A stretch of DNA of 63,320 nucleotides, counting the filler, from Octopus bimaculoides (Eukaryota), in the NCBI RefSeq assembly GCF_001194135.2. It is 5 parts of 5 records of this genome, joined end to end, with 100 filler letters (N's around TTAATTAATTAA, not from the genome) between each part and the next. Parts side by side here need not be neighbours in the genome. Positions count along the whole stretch, not along the records: positions 1 to 14,637 come from NC_069004.1; 4 more parts are not named here. One strand, written 5' to 3'. Numbering within the stretch: the first letter of the stretch is position 1; every line of letters starts with the position of its first letter. The translations under genes were made by a program, and so were the position numbers. Below, piece after piece: positions 65 to 13,011 of this stretch. The notes beneath the pieces are model-generated. The model was not told the DNA's origin, ran no database searches, and saw nothing but the letters and a program-made list of their open reading frames with translations.

Positions 65-355
65 AAACAATTGCAGTGTGGAAGGCGTTTATAAGCCATT
101 TAAAATAACACACAAAATCCGTTAGATTCACTTCAACATTTAAATTTAATTTGTCGAAATATTTTCGTCGCTTTGAGACCGCAACCTGTTCACTGACAAA
201 ATTCTGTGCTGCACAGAATTTTGTCAGTGAACAGGTTGCAGTTTCAAAGCGACGAAAATATTTCGACAAATTAAATTTAAATGTTGAAGTGAATCTAACG
301 GATTTTGTGTGTTATTTTAAATGGCTTATAAACACCTTCCACGCTGCAATTGTTT
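65..355. repeat. 291-bp near-perfect palindrome (145-bp arms, 1-nt loop at 210), probably a foldback repeat element
   Basis: Positions i and 420-i are complementary except four pairs (77/343, 86/334, 177/243, 180/240). (TA)n lies at the window start and right after the 3' arm. Confidence 0.93.
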
Positions 356-2485: not shown

Positions 2486-2569
2486 GAAGCTGGAGCTAAT
2501 GCAATAGAATTGAATCTGTCCTGTCCCCACGGAATGGGAGAAGTCAATATGGGACTTGCATGTGGAACA
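2486..2569 (+). CDS. DPYD: DPYD exon with the catalytic Cys loop ([28 protein letters not shown])
   Basis: Flanked by atcag and gtaagt; 84 nt. The [11 protein letters not shown] motif contains the catalytic Cys (TGT at 2522-2524, equivalent to human C671). Confidence 0.96.
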
Positions 2570-2679
2570 GTAAGTCTGTGATTATATTTCTGTATTTTCA
2601 TCTTTATCTTTTACTTATTTCAGTCATTAGACTGTGGCCATGCTGGGGCACCACCTTGATGCAAAGGGCCACAGAAATA

Positions 2680-2960
2680 TCCATGCTAGGAATACCATTA
2701 CGAAAGCATATTTGAAATGAGATAATTTGAGAACAGAATAGAGTGAATGATGTCATTGAAGAGTACCAAAAACACAATTTCCACTGGGTTGGACATGTCA
2801 CAAGGTTCACAGACAACAGGTGAGCCCATGCTGAGGGGTGTCCAAAAGACTGAAAAATACCACTTGGAAGCCTCCATGATTTAGTTAAGCAATTTGGGTG
2901 AAGATGGAAAAGAATGGTGTAATCAAGACAGAATTGGAAGTGCACTGTGACCAGCAGTGT
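2680..2960 (+). mobile_element. RTE-type LINE 3' fragment
   Basis: HWVGHVTRFTDNR followed by a decayed GRPP/RW region. Confidence 0.6.
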
Positions 2961-3141
2961 ATAACAGCATTTGATAGTCTGGTTGATATTGTGATAATAT
3001 TACTATAAAATTTTATTTTATCCCTCTCTCCTACAAGTTCAGTTCCAAGAATGGTTGTTTTTTTACCTTTATTTCAGTGGTGGCTAAATTGACAATATTA
3101 ACAAAATCATAAGAAATTCTTTATTTGTATGTTTATAAATA

Positions 3142-3302
3142 GGCGTAGGAGTAGCTGTATGGTAAGTAGCTTGCTTACGAACCACATGGTTCTGGGTTCA
3201 GTCCCACTGCGTGGCACCTTGGGCAAGTGTCTTCTACTATAGCCTCGGGCCAACCAAAGCCTTGTGGGTGGATTTGGTAGATGGGAACTGAAAGAAGCCC
3301 GT

Positions 3303-3353
<51 letters not shown>

Positions 3354-3562
3354 ATATATGTTTGTGTGTCGGTGTTTGTCCCCCCAACATCGCTTGACAA
3401 CCACTCCTGGTATGTTTATGTCCCCATCACTAAGTGGTTCAGCAAGAGAGACCGATAGAATAAGTACTAGGCTTACAAAAAATAAGTCCTGGGGTCGATT
3501 TGCTCGACTAAAGGCGGTGCTCCAGCATGGCCACAGTCAAATGACTGAAACGAGTAAAAGAG
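3142..3562 (+). mobile_element. tRNA-derived SINE, family A (CORE-like ccttgggcaag block, internal (TA)n(TG)n, 3' tail ggtgctccagcatggcc...gtaaaaga)
   Basis: B-box-like GGTTCAGTCCC. Further copies in the window near 9155-9537 (-), 54721-55017 (+) and 60040-60240 (-), with partial copies near 1130-1250, 8100-8270 and 45180-45270. Confidence 0.85.
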
Positions 3563-3599
3563 TTATGTATTTCTTTTGTAAGATTCTCAATGTAAAAAC

Positions 3600-3645
3600 G
3601 TAGTGTGGCCAAGTGGTCTAAGGTGGTGGTTTTAGGCACCAGTCT
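3600..3645 (+). pseudogene. 5' half of tRNA-Leu(UAG), truncated at the variable arm
   Basis: gtagtgtggccaagtggtctaaggtggtggttttaggcaccagtc aligns to the eukaryotic tRNA-Leu consensus; anticodon TAG at 3633-3635 in a tggt/acca stem; no T arm. Confidence 0.85.
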
Positions 3646-3649
3646 TTTT

Positions 3650-3724
3650 TCCTTGGTAATATAGTGGTAAGTATCCCTATCTGTCATGTGGGAGACCAGG
3701 GTTTGATTCCCTGCTGGGGAGCCA
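3650..3724 (+). pseudogene. Full-length decayed tRNA-Asp(GUC) ending in CCA
   Basis: 72 nt collinear with the tRNA-Asp consensus; anticodon GTC at 3683-3685; most differences are CpG to TpG/CpA; B box decayed (GGTTTGATTCC); CCA at 3722-3724. Confidence 0.88.
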
Positions 3725-4127
3725 TTAATGCTGTTTTGAAAGGTGGTGCTCCAGCATGGCCCTGGCTTTCGGGTGAAACCAGTAAAAGATAAAGATATTT
3801 GGGGATGGTCATCTTCTGCCAAGCAAACACATGCATTATTTGATCTTTACTTTAGTTTTATTATTGTTTTTTTTTAGTTTATTTATCCATCAAAGTTCTT
3901 TTGTCACACATACTGCGAAGCTCTTCAGTTATTGTATAACACAGAAGGACAAAATGGAATAAAGAGAACAAGAGGAGACACATAGGCAGGAGAGTTGCTG
4001 AAGAGGTCACAGAACGTATTGAAAGAACTTTGACGGACGAATAAACTAATTAAATAATAATACTAATAAAACTTGATATATTTATCGAAATGAGACTTGT
4101 CTTAACTACTTTTTTAATCCATGCTAG

Positions 4128-4248
4128 GTTCCAGAAACAGTAAAACAAATCAGCAAATGGCTGAAAGAAGCAGTTTCAATCCCAGTCTTTCCTAAACTGA
4201 CACCAAATGTCACTGACATAGCCTTGATTGCAGAAGCAGCTAAAGAAG
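4128..4248 (+). CDS. DPYD: DPYD exon ([41 protein letters not shown])
   Basis: Flanked by ctag and gtaac; 121 nt, phase 0/1. Contains the FMN-binding KLTPNVT motif. Confidence 0.95.
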
Positions 4249-4964
4249 GTAACATAATACCTCCTCCTCCTCCTCATCATCATCATCATTTATTACTGTC
4301 ATTGTCATCACCATCATTATTGTCTATTTCATCTTCATCATTGTCATCCTCACAAATCCAAAATATCACTTCATCATCATCATTATTTAACGTGTGTTTT
4401 CCATGGATTGGATGACTTCATAGGTGATGGCCAGCTGAAGAGCTACCCAAGCTCCATGTCTGTTTTAGCATGGCTTCTATGGCTGAATGCCCTTCCTAAT
4501 GCCAACCACTTTAGAGAGTGTACTGGCTGCTTTTATGCAGCACTTCAATGTCTTCGTTATCTTCATCTTCATCATTATTTTTATTGTTATTCAAGTCTGG
4601 TGGGCAACCTTCAACATTTTTATATTTAAAAGGGTTTTTCAATCCAATATTTACATGCTATTTATAGAACTATGGCACATAGACTGTGGAGCTCTTCAGT
4701 GACTGTATACCACAGAAGGACAAAATGGAATAAGCAGAACAAAAGAATTATTTCACATTCTTTCAAAAGTTTATACATCCTTACATACAAAAATGCATGC
4801 ATACATACACACACACATGTACATACTTATAACACCTTACCACTTAGCTTTTAATTTTCTTTGTTGTTTGTACTCTGTGCAAGTTTGGTTTTAAAATATA
4901 AATATCTATATTTTTATACCTATTCATTCATCATCAGAAAATCTTAAGTCTTTGCTTTCTTTCT

Positions 4965-5004
<40 letters not shown>

Positions 5005-5978
5005 NNNNNNNNNNNNNNNNNNNNNNNNNNNNNNNNNNNNNNNNNNNNNNNNNNNNNNNNNNNNNNNNNNNNNNNNNNNNNNNNNNNNNNNNNNNNNNNN
5101 NNNNNNNNNNNNNNNNNNNNNNNNNNNNNNNNNNNNNNNNNNNNNNNNNNNNNNNNNNNNNNNNNNNNNNNNNNNNNNNNNNNNNNNNNNNNNNNNNNNN
5201 NNNNNNNNNNNNNNNNNNNNNNNNNNNNNNNNNNNNNNNNNNNNNNNNNNNNNNNNNNNNNNNNNNNNNNNNNNNNNNNNNNNNNNNNNNNNNNNNNNNN
5301 NNNNNNNNNNNNNNNNNNNNNNNNNNNNNNNNNNNNNNNNNNNNNNNNNNNNNNNNNNNNNNNNNNNNNNNNNNNNNNNNNNNNNNNNNNNNNNNNNNNN
5401 NNNNNNNNNNNNNNNNNNNNNNNNNNNNNNNNNNNNNNNNNNNNNNNNNNNNNNNNNNNNNNNNNNNNNNNNNNNNNNNNNNNNNNNNNNNNNNNNNNNN
5501 NNNNNNNNNNNNNNNNNNNNNNNNNNNNNNNNNNNNNNNNNNNNNNNNNNNNNNNNNNNNNNNNNNNNNNNNNNNNNNNNNNNNNNNNNNNNNNNNNNNN
5601 NNNNNNNNNNNNNNNNNNNNNNNNNNNNNNNNNNNNNNNNNNNNNNNNNNNNNNNNNNNNNNNNNNNNNNNNNNNNNNNNNNNNNNNNNNNNNNNNNNNN
5701 NNNNNNNNNNNNNNNNNNNNNNNNNNNNNNNNNNNNNNNNNNNNNNNNNNNNNNNNNNNNNNNNNNNNNNNNNNNNNNNNNNNNNNNNNNNNNNNNNNNN
5801 NNNNNNNNNNNNNNNNNNNNNNNNNNNNNNNNNNNNNNNNNNNNNNNNNNNNNNNNNNNNNNNNNNNNNNNNNNNNNNNNNNNNNNNNNNNNNNNNNNNN
5901 NNNNNNNNNNNNNNNNNNNNNNNNNNNNNNNNNNNNNNNNNNNNNNNNNNNNNNNNNNNNNNNNNNNNNNNNNNNNNN

Positions 5979-7623: not shown

Positions 7624-7886
7624 GAAACGCTGATGGTGTCACTGCAACCAACACAGTTTCTGGATTAATGGGCATCAAACCAGATGGTACTCCATGGGCA
7701 GCTGTTGGTAAGAAGAGAACCACAACATATGGTGGTGTGTCTGGTAATGCCATCAGACCAATTGCACTGAAAGCTGTTGGTTCCATTAGTAAAAAGCTTC
7801 CAAAGTTTCCTGTAATGGCCACTGGTGGCATTGATAGTGCTGAAGTTGGACTCCAGTTTCTGATGGCTGGTGCTTCTGTTCTACAG
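7624..7886 (+). CDS. DPYD: DPYD exon ([24 protein letters not shown]...[23 protein letters not shown])
   Basis: Flanked by tgtag and gtgcgt; 263 nt, phase 1/0. Contains the ATNT, YGGVSG and ATGGIDSA motifs and overlaps ORF 7668..7931. Confidence 0.96.
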
Positions 7887-9029
7887 GTGCGTAAATTATA
7901 TTTTTACCTAGCTACATACATTTCTGTTTGAATGTGCCTGCCATGTATGCGTGTGTGTATATATATATGTCTGTTTGTCTGTACGCACCTACCTGTCTGC
8001 CTGTATGTGTGTTGTGTGTTGTGTGTTTCATTGTGTGTGACATAGTATTTTGGGCATTAGACTCATAATTGTAATTTGTGGGCTCATTTCCTAAACCAGT
8101 CGGTGTCAATGTTAGAAACATATTGACACACATACACATACATATGACGGGCTTCCATACAGTCTCCATCCACTAAATTTCATTCAGAAAGCATCAATCA
8201 ACTTCTGACACTTACTCAAAGGGTCACATAATATAACCAAACCCCAAACTATTTGATTGTGAAGCAGATTTTTTGACTACAAAACAGCCATATANNNNNN
8301 NNNNNNNNNNNNNNNNNNNNNNNNNNNNNNNNNNNNNNNNNNNNNNNNNNNNNNNNNNNNNNNNNNNNNNNNNNNNNNNNNNNNNNNNNNNNNNTTAAAA
8401 AATATATTTCTAGATAGAGATTGAAACCTCTACCTTCATACAAGTTTGTTAGTTAAATTACTAACACCTTTACCCATTAGGCCATCAAACCAACACCTGA
8501 GAAACAACTTAAAAATGAGATATGTAAATCTTTTTTTATTACTGATTTAATGCTGTGGTAGATTTAATTATCTTGTTTTCCACAGAAATTAACAGATAAA
8601 TAAGCAGTGATAGGACATCCTGCATAATCTGCTAGTGGATTCAAGTCAGACCAGAGTGATAAGTGGAGATTGAAACTTGCAATGCTATTGAACTAATTAT
8701 AAATACCTTTCTTCAGAAGGTCGTCTCTGCAGTAACAAGAACAAACTTAAAAATGAGATATTTATTTAAATCTATTCTCAATAATGATCTGATGCTGTGT
8801 TATTTTTTGCTAAGTACTTCTCCTGCAGTTGCCTTCTTAAGAAGAGAGCATCAGTAGTGCTTTGCCCTGGCACAAAACCAAACTGCATCTCACTCAGTGT
8901 GTCCATATAAAACTGACATTATAAGGAATTTGTTACAATCTGTTAATTACATCAACTTTAAATTCTAATATTAACACTTCTAAATTATATTGATATTATT
9001 TTTTAATTCTGTTCTCCTACCCCCTGCAG

Positions 9030-9141
9030 GATTTGTGCATCAACTGTGGAAAGTGTTACATGGTGTGCAACGACTCTGGATATCAAGCAATAACTTTTGA
9101 CTCTGTGACTCACAAAGCTCATGTTACAGATAACTGTACAG
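9030..9141 (+). CDS. DPYD: DPYD exon, first C-terminal 4Fe-4S motif ([38 protein letters not shown])
   Basis: Flanked by ccctgcag and gtaagt; 112 nt, phase 0/1. CxxCxxCxxxC motif. Confidence 0.95.
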
Positions 9142-9154
9142 GTAAGTGGAATAT

Positions 9155-9537
9155 TCTTTTACTTGTTTTGGTCATTTGACTATGGCCATGCTGGAGCACT
9201 GCCTTCAATGGTTTTTAGTCAAATGAATCAACCCCGGGACTTATTTTTTAAGCCTAGTACCTATTCTATCAGTCTCTTTTGCCAAACCGCTAAGTTACAG
9301 GGATGTAAACACACTAAGACAAGCAGTGACGAGGGGACAAACAAACACAAAGACACACACACTTACACACATGACAGGCGTCTTTCAATTTCCATCTACC
9401 AAATTCACTCTCAAGGCTTTGGTTGGCCTGGAGCTATAGTAGAAGACACTTGCCCATGCTGCCACACAGTGGGACTGAACCCAGAACCATGTGGTTAGGA
9501 AGCAAGCTTTTTACCACACAGCCATATCTGTGCCTAC
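9155..9537 (-). mobile_element. SINE family A copy
   Basis: Reverse complement of the 3142-3562 element along its length. Confidence 0.82.
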
Positions 9538-9900: not shown

Positions 9901-10404
9901 ATGATAGACGACATGCCAGAGGTATTTGGGCCTGCAGGGCCCTGTTAGGGTCTCAGCTATGGGTTAAGTAGCATATAACTATCTGAACCAAGGTACATTG
10001 AAATCATAGGAACACAGGATGGTGGATGCAAACTATTTCAGCAAGTGAATTTATTGAGTTAATGACGAGTATCACTAGATGCTGAGCAGATGAACAGACA
10101 ACAAACTGTTGTGTAGATGAGATATTTCAGCTAATGAGAGACCAATGTGACTAAAAACCTAAGTCAGACATTAATGCCTCATCACTCGATTGGGACATTG
10201 GTGTGAAAGAGTCACATTGATCCAAATAAGTCGCCCAACATGGCTGGATGACACACCAGCTGTTTTTTCTAATATTTACCAAACTGGTCCCATGTAAAAA
10301 GTACCCAGCACACTCTGTAAAGTGGTTGGTATTATGAAGGGTATCCAACCATAGAAATCAAGCCAAATCAGATTAGAGTCTGGTGCAGCTCTCCTGCTTG
10401 CCAG

Positions 10405-10790
10405 TTCTTATTTCTTTACTGCCCACAAGGGGCTAAACATAGAGAGGACAAACAAGGACAGACAAAGGGTTTAAGTCGATTACATCGACCCCAGTGCGTA
10501 ACTAGTACTTAATTTATCGACCCCCGAAAGGATGAAAGGCAAAGTTGGCCTCGGCGGAATTTGAACTCAGAACGTAACAGCAGACGAAATACCGCTAAGC
10601 ATTTCGCCCAGCCAGCTCGCCGCCCTCCTGCCAGTTCTATCCAACCCATGCCAGCATGGAAACAAAGATGTATGATGATAATAATCCTTTCTACTATAGG
10701 GACAAGGCCTGAAAATTGTAGGGAGCAGGTAAGTCAATCACATCTACCCCAGTACTTGACTGGTACTTAATTTATTGACCTCGAAAGGTC
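10405..10790 (-). mobile_element. Two family B SINE copies separated by a short family C tail
   Basis: Family B core at about 10490-10620 and again at about 10690-10790. Confidence 0.72.
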
Positions 10791-10914
10791 ATGAGGATGA
10801 TGATCTCCTCCATATCTGACAATCATGTTATTTCTGTTTTATGTGCTCCTTATCTTTGATCTAGTGGATCAGTTACCCAATTTCTTCATTCATCATTCGC
10901 TTGTTTACTTGCAG

Positions 10915-11048
10915 GTTGCAACCTTTGTGCATCTGTGTGTCCCATTATTGACTGCATCGAAATGATACCACGTACAACACCATTTGCCCCAAAGAGAGGT
11001 CCGTTCCCACTTAAAATCAGCACCAGCAGCCAGCTTGGAGAGTATTGA
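10915..11048 (+). CDS. DPYD: DPYD terminal coding exon ([43 protein letters not shown])
   Basis: Acceptor ttacttgcag; phase 1 continues CTG-CxxCxxVCP; stop TGA at 11046-11048. Matches remembered human [28 protein letters not shown]. Confidence 0.94.
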
Positions 11049-11127: not shown

Positions 11128-11544
11128 TTCTTTTTAATCAATTATATATACATACATATATGTATACATGCAGACATATATATATATATATATACACACA
11201 CAGACCCATACATATCTATATGGTATGCATGTGTGTGTAATATATATATGTGTATATATGTATGTCATATGTATGTACATGTCTTTATATATATGTATAC
11301 ATAATTTCAAATTAAATATTATTATATGTAACATTTCTTTTTTGTTTGATTTTTATTTATCGCCCATGCTGGTGCCATGTAAAATTGCCCAGCACACTGC
11401 AAAGTGGTTGGTGTTAGGAAGGGCATCCAGCTGTAGAAACCAAGCCAAATCAGACTGGAACCTAGTCTCCTGCTTGCCAGCTCTGGTAAAAACCTTCCAA
11501 CCCATGCCCGCATGGTAAATGAATGTTGATTAATAATATTGATA

Positions 11545-11742
11545 ATAATAATGGTTTCAAATTTTGCCAAAAGGGCAGCCATTTCAAGGGAGGAGATAAG
11601 TCAACTGGTACTTACTTAATCGACCCTGGAAGGATGAAAGGCAAAGTTGACCTCTGCAGAATTTGAACACAGAACTTAGCGGCAGACGAAATACTACTAA
11701 GCATTTTGCATGGCGTGCTAATGATTCTGCCAGTTTGCTGCT

Positions 11743-11773
<31 letters not shown>

Positions 11774-11976
11774 TGACAACAATAATCCTTTCTACAATAG
11801 GCACATTCCCCTGAAATTTTGGGGGAGGAGAACAGTTGAACTGGTTCTTAATTTATCAACCCCAAAAGGATGAAAGACAGTTGACCCTGGTGGAATTTGA
11901 ACTTAGACTGAAAAGATGTGTGAAATACTGCTAAGCATTCTGTCCAGTGTGCTAACGATTCTTCCAGCTTGCCGCT

Positions 11977-12017
<41 letters not shown>

Positions 12018-12140
12018 TTCATTTATTTGCCACCAGAGCGAAGGATGAGGCGGACTACAGAAACAGACATAACAATCCTTTCTACTATAAGCACAAGGCC
12101 TGGAATTTTGGGGGTGGGGTTAAGTCAATTACATCGACTC
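11545..12140 (-). mobile_element. Three head-to-tail family B SINE copies separated by (AAT)n tracts
   Basis: Repeated blocks aatcctttctac(t/a)ataggcac and gatgaaag...gaatttgaac, each preceded by (AAT)n. Confidence 0.75.
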
Positions 12141-12204
12141 CAGGTGGCAATGATGAAATGAGCTGTCTAGCATGGTAGACAACACTTTTCACTTTTCTTT
12201 AGAA

Positions 12205-12400: not shown

Positions 12401-12416
12401 TAGTAAAAATCTTCAC

Positions 12417-12790
12417 TCATCATCATTTAATATCCACTTTCCATGCTGGCATGGGTTAGACGGTTTGACTGAAATTGTTAAGCTCAGGAGCTGCACCAGG
12501 TTCCAATCTGATTTGGCATGGTTTCTATGACTGGATGCCCTTTCTAATGCCAACCACTCCAAGATGGGTACTTTTTTATGTGACACCAGCATTGGCCACA
12601 ACTATGATTTCACTAGTCTTGATGAGCCTTTTCAAGCACGGCATATTGCCAAAGGTCTTGCTCACTTATCATCTCCATGTGGTCCAACATTCAAAGGGTG
12701 CTTTTTACGTGTCACTGGCACAAATGCTTGTTACATGACACCAGCATCGGCCACGACTACAGTTTCACTGGGCTTGATGAGTCTCCTCAT
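12417..12790 (-). mobile_element. Family C SINE-related repeat
   Basis: Collinear with 1622-2010. Confidence 0.7.
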
Positions 12791-13011
12791 TATTTAAAAA
12801 ATTTAATTGAACCAAAGACAGAAATATGGTAATAAAAGAGTTAAACCATCAGGCAACCTTGTTACAAAGAAAGGATTTCAGAGCAGATATAACTATTAAC
12901 AGGTTACTTTTGTTTGATATTAGTGTTCCTTCAGGTAGAAATAATGGTTTGTAGAAAATCTTGGTTCATGGAAGGAAAATGTGCACAGCAACAAACAATG
13001 ATTTCAGAGAC

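What the first reader, a model, noticed from the sequence alone, without database searches (positions are those of the whole stretch)
3600..3795. Chimeric tRNA-Leu half + tRNA-Asp-CCA + SINE-type 3' tail: a possible new dimeric-tRNA SINE
Seen in the sequence: a tRNA-Leu(UAG) 5' half (3600-3645) is joined through a T run to a complete decayed tRNA-Asp(GUC) (3650-3721) ending in CCA. About 15 nt later comes aaaggtggtgctccagcatggcc...tgaaaccagtaaaaga-taaaga (3739-3795), nearly the same 3' tail as the family A SINE just upstream (3510-3561) but with a different short hairpin spacer. Established: eukaryotic tRNA genes do not encode CCA, and SINEs arise when a Pol III head acquires a LINE-recognised 3' tail. 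Inference: this is a retroposed product of mature tRNAs (RT template switch) and possibly a separate SINE family or a SINE-birth intermediate.
Basis: partly seen in the sequence, partly recalled or inferred. Interest (0 to 1): 0.7.

Follow-up and report, generated by a model that had tools for sequence, protein, structure and literature searches.

The report
Chimeric tRNA retrocopy with SINE tail
In an intron of the octopus DPYD gene sits a decayed, reverse-transcribed patchwork of part of tRNA-Leu, a whole tRNA-Asp and the 3' tail used by octopus SINEs; it shows how a new SINE could start, but nothing here shows that it became one.

Summary
Window 3600-3648 matches positions 2-50 of tRNA-Leu(UAG). 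Window 3650-3721 is a foldable tRNA-Asp(GUC), followed by CCA. After a 14-nt spacer comes the 3' tail module (3739-3795) of the abundant CORE-type SINE.

Every internal boundary falls at the end of an RNA. That is the signature of a reverse transcriptase jumping from the tail-bearing RNA to tRNA-Asp and then to a 5' fragment of tRNA-Leu. Retro-chimeras of this kind, including three-part ones, are already known.

The claim of a new dimeric-tRNA SINE is not supported, though it is not excluded:
- The Leu part has no B box.
- The element carries three T runs of 4 or more, including a T6 at the Leu/Asp joint and a T4 just before the tail. Five of six copies of the real SINE have none.
- Both promoter boxes of the Asp part are hit.
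- No target-site duplication was found.
- No second copy occurs in about 35 kb of octopus DNA.

Verdict: an ordinary but neat member of a known kind.

The parts
3600..3648 (+). Copy of the 5' part of tRNA-Leu(UAG), positions 2-50. It has an A box but no B box, and it ends in the loop of the variable arm.
   Evidence: Ungapped alignment with 41 of 49 identical; best of 12 tRNAs; score 33 against 13 or less elsewhere in the window. Four of the 8 differences are CpG transitions, and two form the compensated pair 31:39.
3645..3650 (+). T6 run at the Leu/Asp joint. It overlaps the last T's of the Leu copy and T1 of Asp, with at most one extra T.
   Evidence: Read from the sequence; T-run inventory. 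It would act as a Pol III terminator on the sense strand.
3650..3721 (+). Complete, still foldable, CpG-depleted copy of tRNA-Asp(GUC), starting exactly at tRNA position 1.
   Evidence: ARAGORN; Rfam tRNA 44.1 bits; 58 of 72 identical to the canonical sequence, 12 of 14 differences are transitions and 9 are at CpG. The G7-C pair and the CCCTGCTGGGGA 3' end match native tRNA-Asp genes of other eukaryotes, seen as antisense ORFs.
3722..3724 (+). CCA directly after the discriminator G.
   Evidence: Sequence. Chance probability is about 0.01 at this base composition (my estimate).
3725..3738 (+). 14-nt spacer ttaatgctgttttg of unknown origin, with T4 at 3734-3737 abutting the tail.
   Evidence: Sequence. 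No significant match to the SINE or to the LINE fragment.
3739..3795 (+). 3' tail module. Hairpin 1 is 3742-3761 (conserved). Hairpin 2 is 3762-3782 (variant CUGG.CUUUC-GGGU-GAAA-CCAG). The terminal repeats are UAAAAGA-UAAAGA (3783-3795).
   Evidence: Motif search, alignments, folds. All similarity to the other 12 tails starts at 3739/3740. None of the other 12 tails in the window and L130 has this hairpin 2.
3145..3561 (+). Context: a full-length copy of the abundant CORE-type SINE (tRNA-like head, CORE-like box, internal TG/TA microsatellite, same tail), 38 nt upstream.
   Evidence: Alignments with the copy at 9155-9536(-) and with copies in O. vulgaris locus L130. Match to the MIR core, p about 0.003.
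2570..4127 (+). Context: the 1.56-kb DPYD intron that holds the element in sense orientation, between the exons at 2486-2569 and 4128-4250.
   Evidence: The exon peptides match pig dihydropyrimidine dehydrogenase residues 660-820 and 945-1016, E = 3e-99.

Best explanation
The element at 3600-3795 is a decayed, non-functional retrocopy. Its sequence was assembled by a LINE-type reverse transcriptase that changed template twice.

Proposed steps:
1. Reverse transcription began on an RNA carrying the 3' tail recognised by the enzyme. That tail is a variant of the one on the abundant CORE-type SINE: two hairpins plus terminal GTAAAAGA/TAAAGA repeats.
2. After about 57-71 nt the enzyme jumped to the 3' end of a tRNA-Asp molecule. 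This was either mature tRNA with CCA, or a pre-tRNA that was 5'-processed and still carried a 3' trailer ending in UUUU.
3. It copied that molecule to its exact 5' end.
4. It jumped to the 3' end of a 5' fragment of tRNA-Leu(UAG) that had been cut in the variable-arm loop, and copied that to its 5' end.
5. The cDNA was joined into an intron of DPYD.

After insertion the copy lost nearly all its CpGs. It also lost key promoter bases: G10 in the A box and C56 in the B box of the Asp part.

This locus is most likely a one-off, or at most a member of a small family. It is a stillborn SINE precursor, not an established dimeric-tRNA SINE.

What is shown: the three parts, their boundaries, the tail structure and the T runs. 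What is inferred: the order of the jumps, the enzyme, and the low copy number.
For: - Identity of the three parts, all in the same orientation.
- Every internal boundary is an RNA end: Leu starts at position 2, Leu ends inside the variable-arm loop, Asp starts at position 1, and Asp ends in CCA or a U-run trailer.
- Only the tail is repeated; the Leu and Asp parts have no other copy in the window plus L130, about 35 kb.
- Tails occur about once per 2.7 kb (13 in 35 kb). A same-strand tail starting within 20 nt of a given tRNA end by chance has a probability of about 0.004 (my estimate).
- The second tail that is not part of a SINE copy (2601-2657, minus strand) breaks at the same AAGG boundary, has the same AAAAGATAAAGAT end, and is fused to foreign sequence: an antisense RTE-like LINE fragment. 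The enzyme therefore seems to leave its template at this point repeatedly. Template switching at specific sites was reported for fungal chimeras (PMC2104539).
- Hairpin 2 of this tail is a structured variant, with a change that completes the stem. The tail therefore came from a distinct functional tail lineage and is not a decayed copy of the common one.
- Against an active SINE: three T runs of 4 or more, including a T6, in 196 nt, compared with none in five of six copies of the true SINE at 376-430 nt each; no B box in the Leu part; G10A and C56T in the Asp part.
- The downstream flank holds no 3' half of tRNA-Leu.
- Bipartite and tripartite chimeras made by LINE template switching, and tRNA-half/LINE-1 chimeras, are documented (PMC2104539; bioRxiv 10.1101/2025.02.02.635956).
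Against: - No target-site duplication of 6 nt or more flanks the element, so a single-event insertion is not proven.
- The 14-nt spacer is unexplained if the template was mature tRNA-CCA.
- Copy number was not measured. Only about 35 kb of octopus DNA could be examined, and the protein-database trick is blind to SINEs (the control with the abundant SINE gave only 2 hits).
- Three-part one-offs are very rare in other genomes. Meeting one in a random 14.6-kb piece is a priori less likely than meeting a copy of a repeated family. Octopus genomes are reported to hold hundreds of unclassified SINE families (PMC13282606).
- Two of the three T runs may be partly due to later mutation.
Confidence: 0.55

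Rival explanations
1. The locus is one copy of a real repeated SINE family. The family could be Leu-part + Asp-CCA + tail as a unit, or a simple Asp-CCA-tail SINE to which this copy added a Leu fragment at its 5' end. Either family would itself have been founded by the same kind of template switch.
For: - It has all the modules of a simple SINE: a tRNA head 58 of 72 identical to tRNA-Asp and a structured tail of the type used by the abundant SINE.
- The variant hairpin 2 points to a separate tail lineage.
- Octopus genomes are 11.6% SINE, with about 900 mostly unclassified SINE families reported as recently active (PMC13282606).
- A random window is more likely to hit a repeated family than a unique event (inference).
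Against: - The T6 between Leu and Asp and the T4 directly before the tail would stop Pol III before the tail is transcribed. The true SINE is strongly depleted of T4 runs.
- The Leu part has no B box.
- The differences from the tRNAs are almost all CpG decay or native-looking compensated pairs, so no family-specific diagnostic changes are visible.
- No second copy and no other tail of this type among 13 tails in about 35 kb.
- No TSD.
Confidence: 0.3
2. This variant concerns one step only and is compatible with either explanation above. The Asp template was not mature tRNA. It was a pre-tRNA-Asp that was 5'-processed and 3'-unprocessed, with trailer CCAUUAAUGCUGUUUU. On this reading the CCA is a coincidence and the spacer is the trailer up to the Pol III terminator.
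For: - The spacer ends in TTTT one base before the tail module starts.
- A T run 12-16 nt after a tRNA is the normal terminator position.
- 5' processing before 3' processing gives exactly such La-bound intermediates (established knowledge of tRNA maturation).
- U6 in U6/L1 chimeras also ends in its U run (recalled, not checked here).
- It explains the 14 nt that the mature-tRNA model leaves unexplained.
Against: - CCA in the first three trailer positions has a chance of about 0.01.
- One G lies between the T run and the tail.
- The spacer could equally be the donor's own sequence upstream of the tail module.
Confidence: 0.3
3. The tRNA parts are remnants of tRNA genes that stood here (a Leu/Asp cluster with a deletion). 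The tail is an unrelated, truncated SINE/LINE insertion that happened to land next to them.
For: - TTTT lies 12 nt after the Asp part, as in a real tRNA gene.
- Tail-only insertions exist (2601-2657).
- The region is a hotspot of insertions.
Against: - It needs CCA by chance (about 0.01) and a same-strand tail within 20 nt by chance (about 0.004).
- A DNA deletion would not be expected to end exactly at Asp position 1.
- No Leu 3' half lies downstream.
- The site is inside a 1.56-kb intron of DPYD that otherwise consists of retro-insertions.
Confidence: 0.05

Closest known systems
Chimeric retrocopies made by LINE reverse-transcriptase template switching: U6/L1, tRNA-half/L1, and tripartite chimeras in human, mouse and Magnaporthe (PMC2104539; bioRxiv 10.1101/2025.02.02.635956)
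   Same: Copies of different cellular RNAs are fused directly. The 3'-most part is a 5'-truncated LINE/SINE 3' end. The small RNAs are copied to their 5' ends. tRNA fragments take part. Double jumps give three-part elements. Switching happens at preferred sites.
   Different: The tail here is a short structured module of the kind expected for a stringent LINE, in a mollusc, and not L1 with poly(A). Both tRNA parts are in sense orientation, whereas tRNA/L1 chimeras are mostly antisense. A 14-nt spacer is present. No TSD was found, whereas the published tripartite fungal case has a 14-bp TSD.
SINE genesis by fusion of a tRNA with a LINE 3' end (Okada and Ohshima 1993 and Kojima 2018, as cited; SINEBase definitions, PMC3531059)
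   Same: A tRNA head is joined to a LINE-type tail, which is the postulated first step in making a SINE. By my recollection, some SINE consensus sequences from squid, salmon and tortoise carry CCA after the tRNA-related region; this was not checked here.
   Different: There is no evidence of amplification. Internal T runs and a damaged promoter are present. An extra tRNA-Leu fragment lies in front.
Twin SINE of Culex pipiens and other dimeric tRNA-derived SINEs (Feschotte et al. 2001, cited in PMC3531059)
   Same: Two tRNA-related regions stand in tandem at the 5' end.
   Different: Dimeric SINEs combine two complete, or nearly complete, SINE or tRNA-related units (SINEBase definition, PMC3531059). 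Here the first unit is a 49-nt 5' fragment without a B box, separated from the second by a T6.
Tailless tRNA retropseudogenes of mammals (Schmitz et al. 2004, as described in PMC3747384)
   Same: They are retrocopies of truncated tRNAs. The Leu fragment here has that character.
   Different: Those elements lack any tail and stand alone. This element ends in a LINE/SINE tail and is composite.

Membership tests
SINE (SINEBase definition, PMC3531059) | Short (<1 kb) interspersed genomic repeat | tested here: inconclusive
   At 196 nt the length criterion is met. Only the tail is repeated; no second copy of the Leu or Asp parts in the window plus L130, about 35 kb.
SINE (SINEBase definition, PMC3531059) | [quoted passage not shown] | not testable with these tools
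No octopus DNA in genome contigs or viral contigs. The metagenome scan gave only chance hits. The protein databases hold almost no SINE ORFs (control).
SINE (SINEBase definition, PMC3531059) | [quoted passage not shown] | tested here: met
   The Asp part is 58 of 72 identical (81%) to canonical tRNA-Asp(GTC). Rfam tRNA scores 44.1 bits.
SINE (SINEBase definition, PMC3531059) | [quoted passage not shown] | tested here: inconclusive
   From sequence only. T6 at 3645-3650 and T4 at 3630-3633 and 3734-3737, against none in 5 of 6 copies of the true SINE. G10A in the A box and C56T in the B box of the Asp part. The present copy looks incompetent; the state at insertion is unknown. No expression data could be obtained.
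SINE (SINEBase definition, PMC3531059) | 3' region shared with a partner LINE | tested here: inconclusive
   The tail is shared with the abundant CORE-type SINE. No intact LINE with this tail was found. The adjacent RTE-like fragment shows no similarity to the SINE body.
LINE template-switch chimeric retrocopy | Same-sense copies of different cellular RNAs fused directly, with a 5'-truncated LINE/SINE 3' end as the 3'-most part | tested here: met
   Leu 2-50, Asp 1-72 plus CCA, and the tail module, all on the + strand.
LINE template-switch chimeric retrocopy | Junctions fall at the ends of the donor RNAs | tested here: met
   Asp starts at position 1. Leu starts at position 2 and ends in the variable-arm loop. 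Asp ends in CCA or a U-run trailer.
LINE template-switch chimeric retrocopy | The whole chimera is flanked by one target-site duplication | tested here: not met
   The best flank match is 5-6 nt and is not above shuffled controls. TSDs of the neighbouring SINE copies are themselves short and TA-rich, so the test is weak.
Dimeric tRNA-derived SINE (Twin type) | Two complete, or nearly complete, tRNA-related units, as SINEBase requires for a dimeric SINE | tested here: not met
   The Leu part stops at position 50, with no T arm and no B box. Rfam and ARAGORN find only one tRNA.
Functional tRNA-Asp gene | Intact cloverleaf with conserved G10 and C56, and no encoded CCA | tested here: not met
   The cloverleaf folds (44.1 bits), but G10A and C56T are present, all canonical CpGs are lost, and CCA is present.

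The most novel reading that the evidence does not exclude
The block is a copy, or the founder, of a so far undescribed octopus SINE family. Its head was built from RNA molecules (a tRNA-Leu 5' fragment plus tRNA-Asp with CCA) joined to a variant tail hairpin. If so, it would be a young, datable example of SINE birth by template switching in a cephalopod, possibly tied to a distinct LINE subfamily that recognises the variant hairpin.
Probability: 0.2. Interest if true: 0.55.

Novelty: new member of a known kind. Interest (0 to 1): 0.3.

Why it matters
It is a clear single-locus illustration, outside mammals and fungi, of how a reverse transcriptase can stitch cellular tRNAs to a LINE/SINE tail. 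That is the step thought to create new SINEs. Together with the second tail in the same intron, which breaks at the same AAGG boundary, it suggests a preferred exit point at the 5' edge of the tail module. This could help explain why octopus genomes hold so many SINE families. It changes no established view. Its value would rise only if genome-wide copies, or the donor LINE with the variant hairpin, were found.

Tried and rejected

(2) Scans of public DNA.
- The metagenome scan with the 17-nt tail core gave 120 or more loci.
- A 24-nt SINE tail pattern found nothing in genome contigs or viral contigs, so no octopus DNA is held there.

(3) Searching for other copies through spurious ORFs.
- The antisense ORF across the element (3598-3822) had no word-sharing hit among 5.8 billion proteins.
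- The full HMMER search found only antisense ORFs across tandem tRNA-Asp gene arrays of other eukaryotes.
- The control with the abundant SINE gave just 2 hits, so these nulls say nothing about copy number.

(4) The third protein search, with the decayed LINE fragment and meant to sample more octopus loci, found nothing.

(5) Exact look-ups of seven window ORFs found nothing on record. Only P0001 and P0002 gave loci: L130 (20 kb of O. vulgaris) and L131 (591 nt).

(6) A split tRNA-Leu gene with its 3' half downstream of 3795 is rejected: the alignment score equals the shuffled null.

(7) TSD search around 3562-3605 and 3786-3850: nothing above chance.

(8) The spacer against the SINE and the LINE fragment: only a 9-nt match, compatible with chance.

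(9) Full-text search for the tail sequence in papers: no hit. The supplement of the 2026 O. vulgaris repeat paper is a single short document (6,437 characters) and was not opened.

(10) Rfam at E up to 10 finds no second tRNA in 3130-3830.

Full report
**What is in the sequence**

Window 3600-3795 consists of three recognisable parts, all on the + strand.

The first part, 3600-3648, aligns without gaps to positions 2-50 of a canonical metazoan tRNA-Leu(UAG).
- 41 of 49 bases are identical.
- The score is 33, while no unrelated place in the window on either strand exceeds 13.
- Leu-TAG is the best of twelve tRNAs tried.
- It is therefore more than a 'half'. It runs through the whole anticodon arm and stops in the loop of the variable arm (..CAGTCTCTT | CGGAGG..).
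- Four of its 8 differences are CpG transitions, and two form the still-paired 31:39 couple.

The second part, 3650-3721, is a complete tRNA-Asp(GUC).
- ARAGORN calls it, and the Rfam tRNA model gives 44.1 bits against a gathering score of 29.
- 58 of 72 bases equal the canonical sequence.
- 12 of the 14 differences are transitions, and 9 of those lie at canonical CpG sites.
- The T7-A to G7-C change is compensated.
- Antisense ORFs running over tandem tRNA-Asp genes of other eukaryotes show the same CCCTGCTGGGGA 3' end. Several of the 'differences' are therefore probably native to the source tRNA.

CCA follows at 3722-3724. Then comes a 14-nt spacer, ttaatgctgttttg. The third part is the tail at 3739-3795.

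**The tail**

The 17-mer GGTGCTCCAGCATGGCC occurs four times in the window, where 0.01 are expected.
- Two of the sites close full copies of a roughly 400-nt SINE (3145-3561 + and 9155-9536 -). This SINE has a tRNA-like head, a CORE-like box and an internal TG/TA microsatellite.
- A translated SINE copy led to an Octopus vulgaris protein and a 20-kb locus, L130. That locus holds nine more tails. The host is therefore an Octopus, and the SINE is extremely abundant. It is probably the OR2-type CORE-SINE named in PMC4758252.

All similarity between the element and the other 12 tails begins at 3739/3740, at AAAGG/AAGG.

The module folds into two hairpins followed by GTAAAAGA/TAAAGA repeats.
- Hairpin 1 is conserved.
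- Hairpin 2 is CAGUC-AAAU-GACUG in all twelve other tails. In the element it is CUGG.CUUUC-GGGU-GAAA-CCAG.
- The single change in the downstream block (AAACAAG to AAACCAG) completes the new stem.
- A replaced, still-pairing hairpin between near-identical flanks is not decay. It points to a different functional tail lineage.

**How the block arose**

Each internal boundary coincides with an end of an RNA molecule:
- the 5' end of tRNA-Leu, less one base;
- a cut in an exposed loop of tRNA-Leu;
- position 1 of tRNA-Asp;
- the 3' end of tRNA-Asp.

This is what run-off reverse transcription with end-to-end template jumps produces. A DNA deletion in a tRNA gene cluster would not be expected to produce it.

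Chance adjacency is unlikely. Tails occur about once per 2.7 kb, so a same-strand tail within 20 nt of a given point has a probability of about 0.004. CCA has a probability of about 0.01. Both figures are my estimates.

The downstream flank contains no 3' half of tRNA-Leu. The element therefore did not split a Leu gene.

The other tail in this intron that is not part of a SINE copy (2601-2657, minus strand) has three things in common with the element:
- it breaks at the same AAGG boundary;
- it shares the AAAAGATAAAGAT end;
- it is fused, within 2 nt, to foreign sequence, namely the 5'-truncated end of an RTE-like LINE fragment in the opposite orientation.

Two of two non-SINE tails leaving the template at one point fits template switching at preferred sites, as reported for fungal chimeras (PMC2104539). 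Bipartite and tripartite chimeras, and chimeras of LINE-1 with tRNA halves, are documented.

**How strong is the CCA argument?**

The spacer ends in TTTT one base before the tail. A T run 12-16 nt after a tRNA is exactly where a Pol III terminator sits.

A pre-tRNA-Asp that is 5'-processed and 3'-unprocessed is a normal maturation intermediate. If its trailer happened to begin with CCA, it would explain both the exact 5' end and the spacer. The mature-tRNA model leaves the 14 nt unexplained, unless they belong to the donor of the variant tail.

My rough likelihoods favour mature tRNA only about 2:1. Either way the product is a retro-chimera.

**Is it a SINE?**

SINEBase requires an interspersed repeat of at least 100 copies with a Pol III-type head (PMC3531059).

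Copy number could not be measured:
- The public DNA collections on hand hold no octopus DNA.
- Protein databases are blind to SINEs, as the control with the abundant SINE showed.

What can be read from the sequence speaks against an efficient SINE:
- The Leu part has an A box but no B box.
- A T6 lies between Leu and Asp, a T4 lies directly before the tail, and another T4 lies in the Leu anticodon loop. Five of six copies of the true SINE, at 376-430 nt each, have no T4 at all, where about two per copy are expected from composition.
- G10 and C56 of the Asp promoter boxes are mutated.
- There is no convincing target-site duplication.
- There is no second copy and no other tail of this type in about 35 kb.

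Against this stand two considerations:
- Unique three-part chimeras are very rare elsewhere, so a random window is a priori more likely to hit a repeated family.
- Octopus genomes are reported to contain hundreds of unclassified SINE families (PMC13282606).

I therefore put about 0.55 on a one-off or a very small family, about 0.3 on a real family, and about 0.05 on tRNA-gene remnants plus an unrelated insertion.

**Context**

The window covers the 3' part of the dihydropyrimidine dehydrogenase gene (DPYD) on the + strand.
- The exons at 2486-2569, 4128-4250, 7626-7889, 9030-9143 and 10902-11000 match pig DPD residues 660-820 and 945-1016, with E = 3e-99.
- The element lies in sense orientation in a 1.56-kb intron (2570-4127).
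- Most of that intron is made of retro-insertions: the tail-only piece, the LINE fragment, the SINE and the element.
- This short intron between conserved exons is an easy target for cross-species comparison. Such a comparison would date the insertion and reveal the empty site.

**Verdict**

The retro-origin by template switching is well supported by the anatomy. The claim of a new dimeric-tRNA SINE is not supported, but it could not be tested at genome scale. This is a new member of a known kind, of modest interest.

Noticed in passing
window 2486-2569, 4128-4250, 7626-7889, 9030-9143, 10902-11000 (+): Five exons of dihydropyrimidine dehydrogenase (DPYD), matching pig DPD residues 660-820 and 945-1016. 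The open frame after 11000 runs to a stop codon 16 codons further on (..[18 protein letters not shown]), so this is probably the last coding exon. The window is the 3' part of the gene, and its introns are only 1-3.5 kb.
   Followed up: yes
window 2601-2657 (-) and 2660-about 3000 (+): A tail-only copy ends at the same AAGG boundary as the element. It abuts, head to head and within 2 nt, the 5'-truncated end of a decayed RTE-like LINE ORF2 C-terminus (MQRATEISMLGIPLRKHI.NEII..HWVGHV..). This looks like a twin-priming inversion or a second template-switch chimera. No similarity was found between this LINE fragment and the SINE body.
   Followed up: partly
window 3145-3561 (+), 9155-9536 (-); L130, nine copies: The abundant SINE has a CORE-like box (ACCTTGGGCAAGT), an internal TG/TA microsatellite of variable length, 3' ends with 1-3 GTAAAAGA-type repeats often followed by (TA)n, and a strong lack of T4 runs on its sense strand. 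It is probably the OR2 CORE-SINE of Ohshima and Okada (1994).
   Followed up: partly
window 65-355 and 368-760: Two near-perfect foldbacks: arms of 145 nt (97% complementary, 1 nt apart) and of 131 nt (96%, 131 nt apart). The first gives symmetric sub-threshold Rfam hits to the plant MIR6140 family on both strands. It is most likely a MITE-like palindrome and not a miRNA gene.
   Followed up: no
window about 1640-2270, 10300-10800, 11390-12170, 12410-12830: Several copies of at least one other repeat family, with a tRNA-like B box (GAGTTCAAATTCCGCCGAGG) on the minus strand. This is a second SINE-like family, different from the CORE-type one.
   Followed up: no
window 5005-5978 and 8295-8394: Runs of N (assembly gaps). 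The second lies between DPYD exons and may hide the exons for DPD residues 821-944.
   Followed up: no
window 3630-3633: The Leu copy has T31-A39 in place of the canonical A31-T39, a change on both sides that keeps the pair. If this is native, it puts four T's in a row inside the octopus tRNA-Leu(UAG) gene itself.
   Followed up: no
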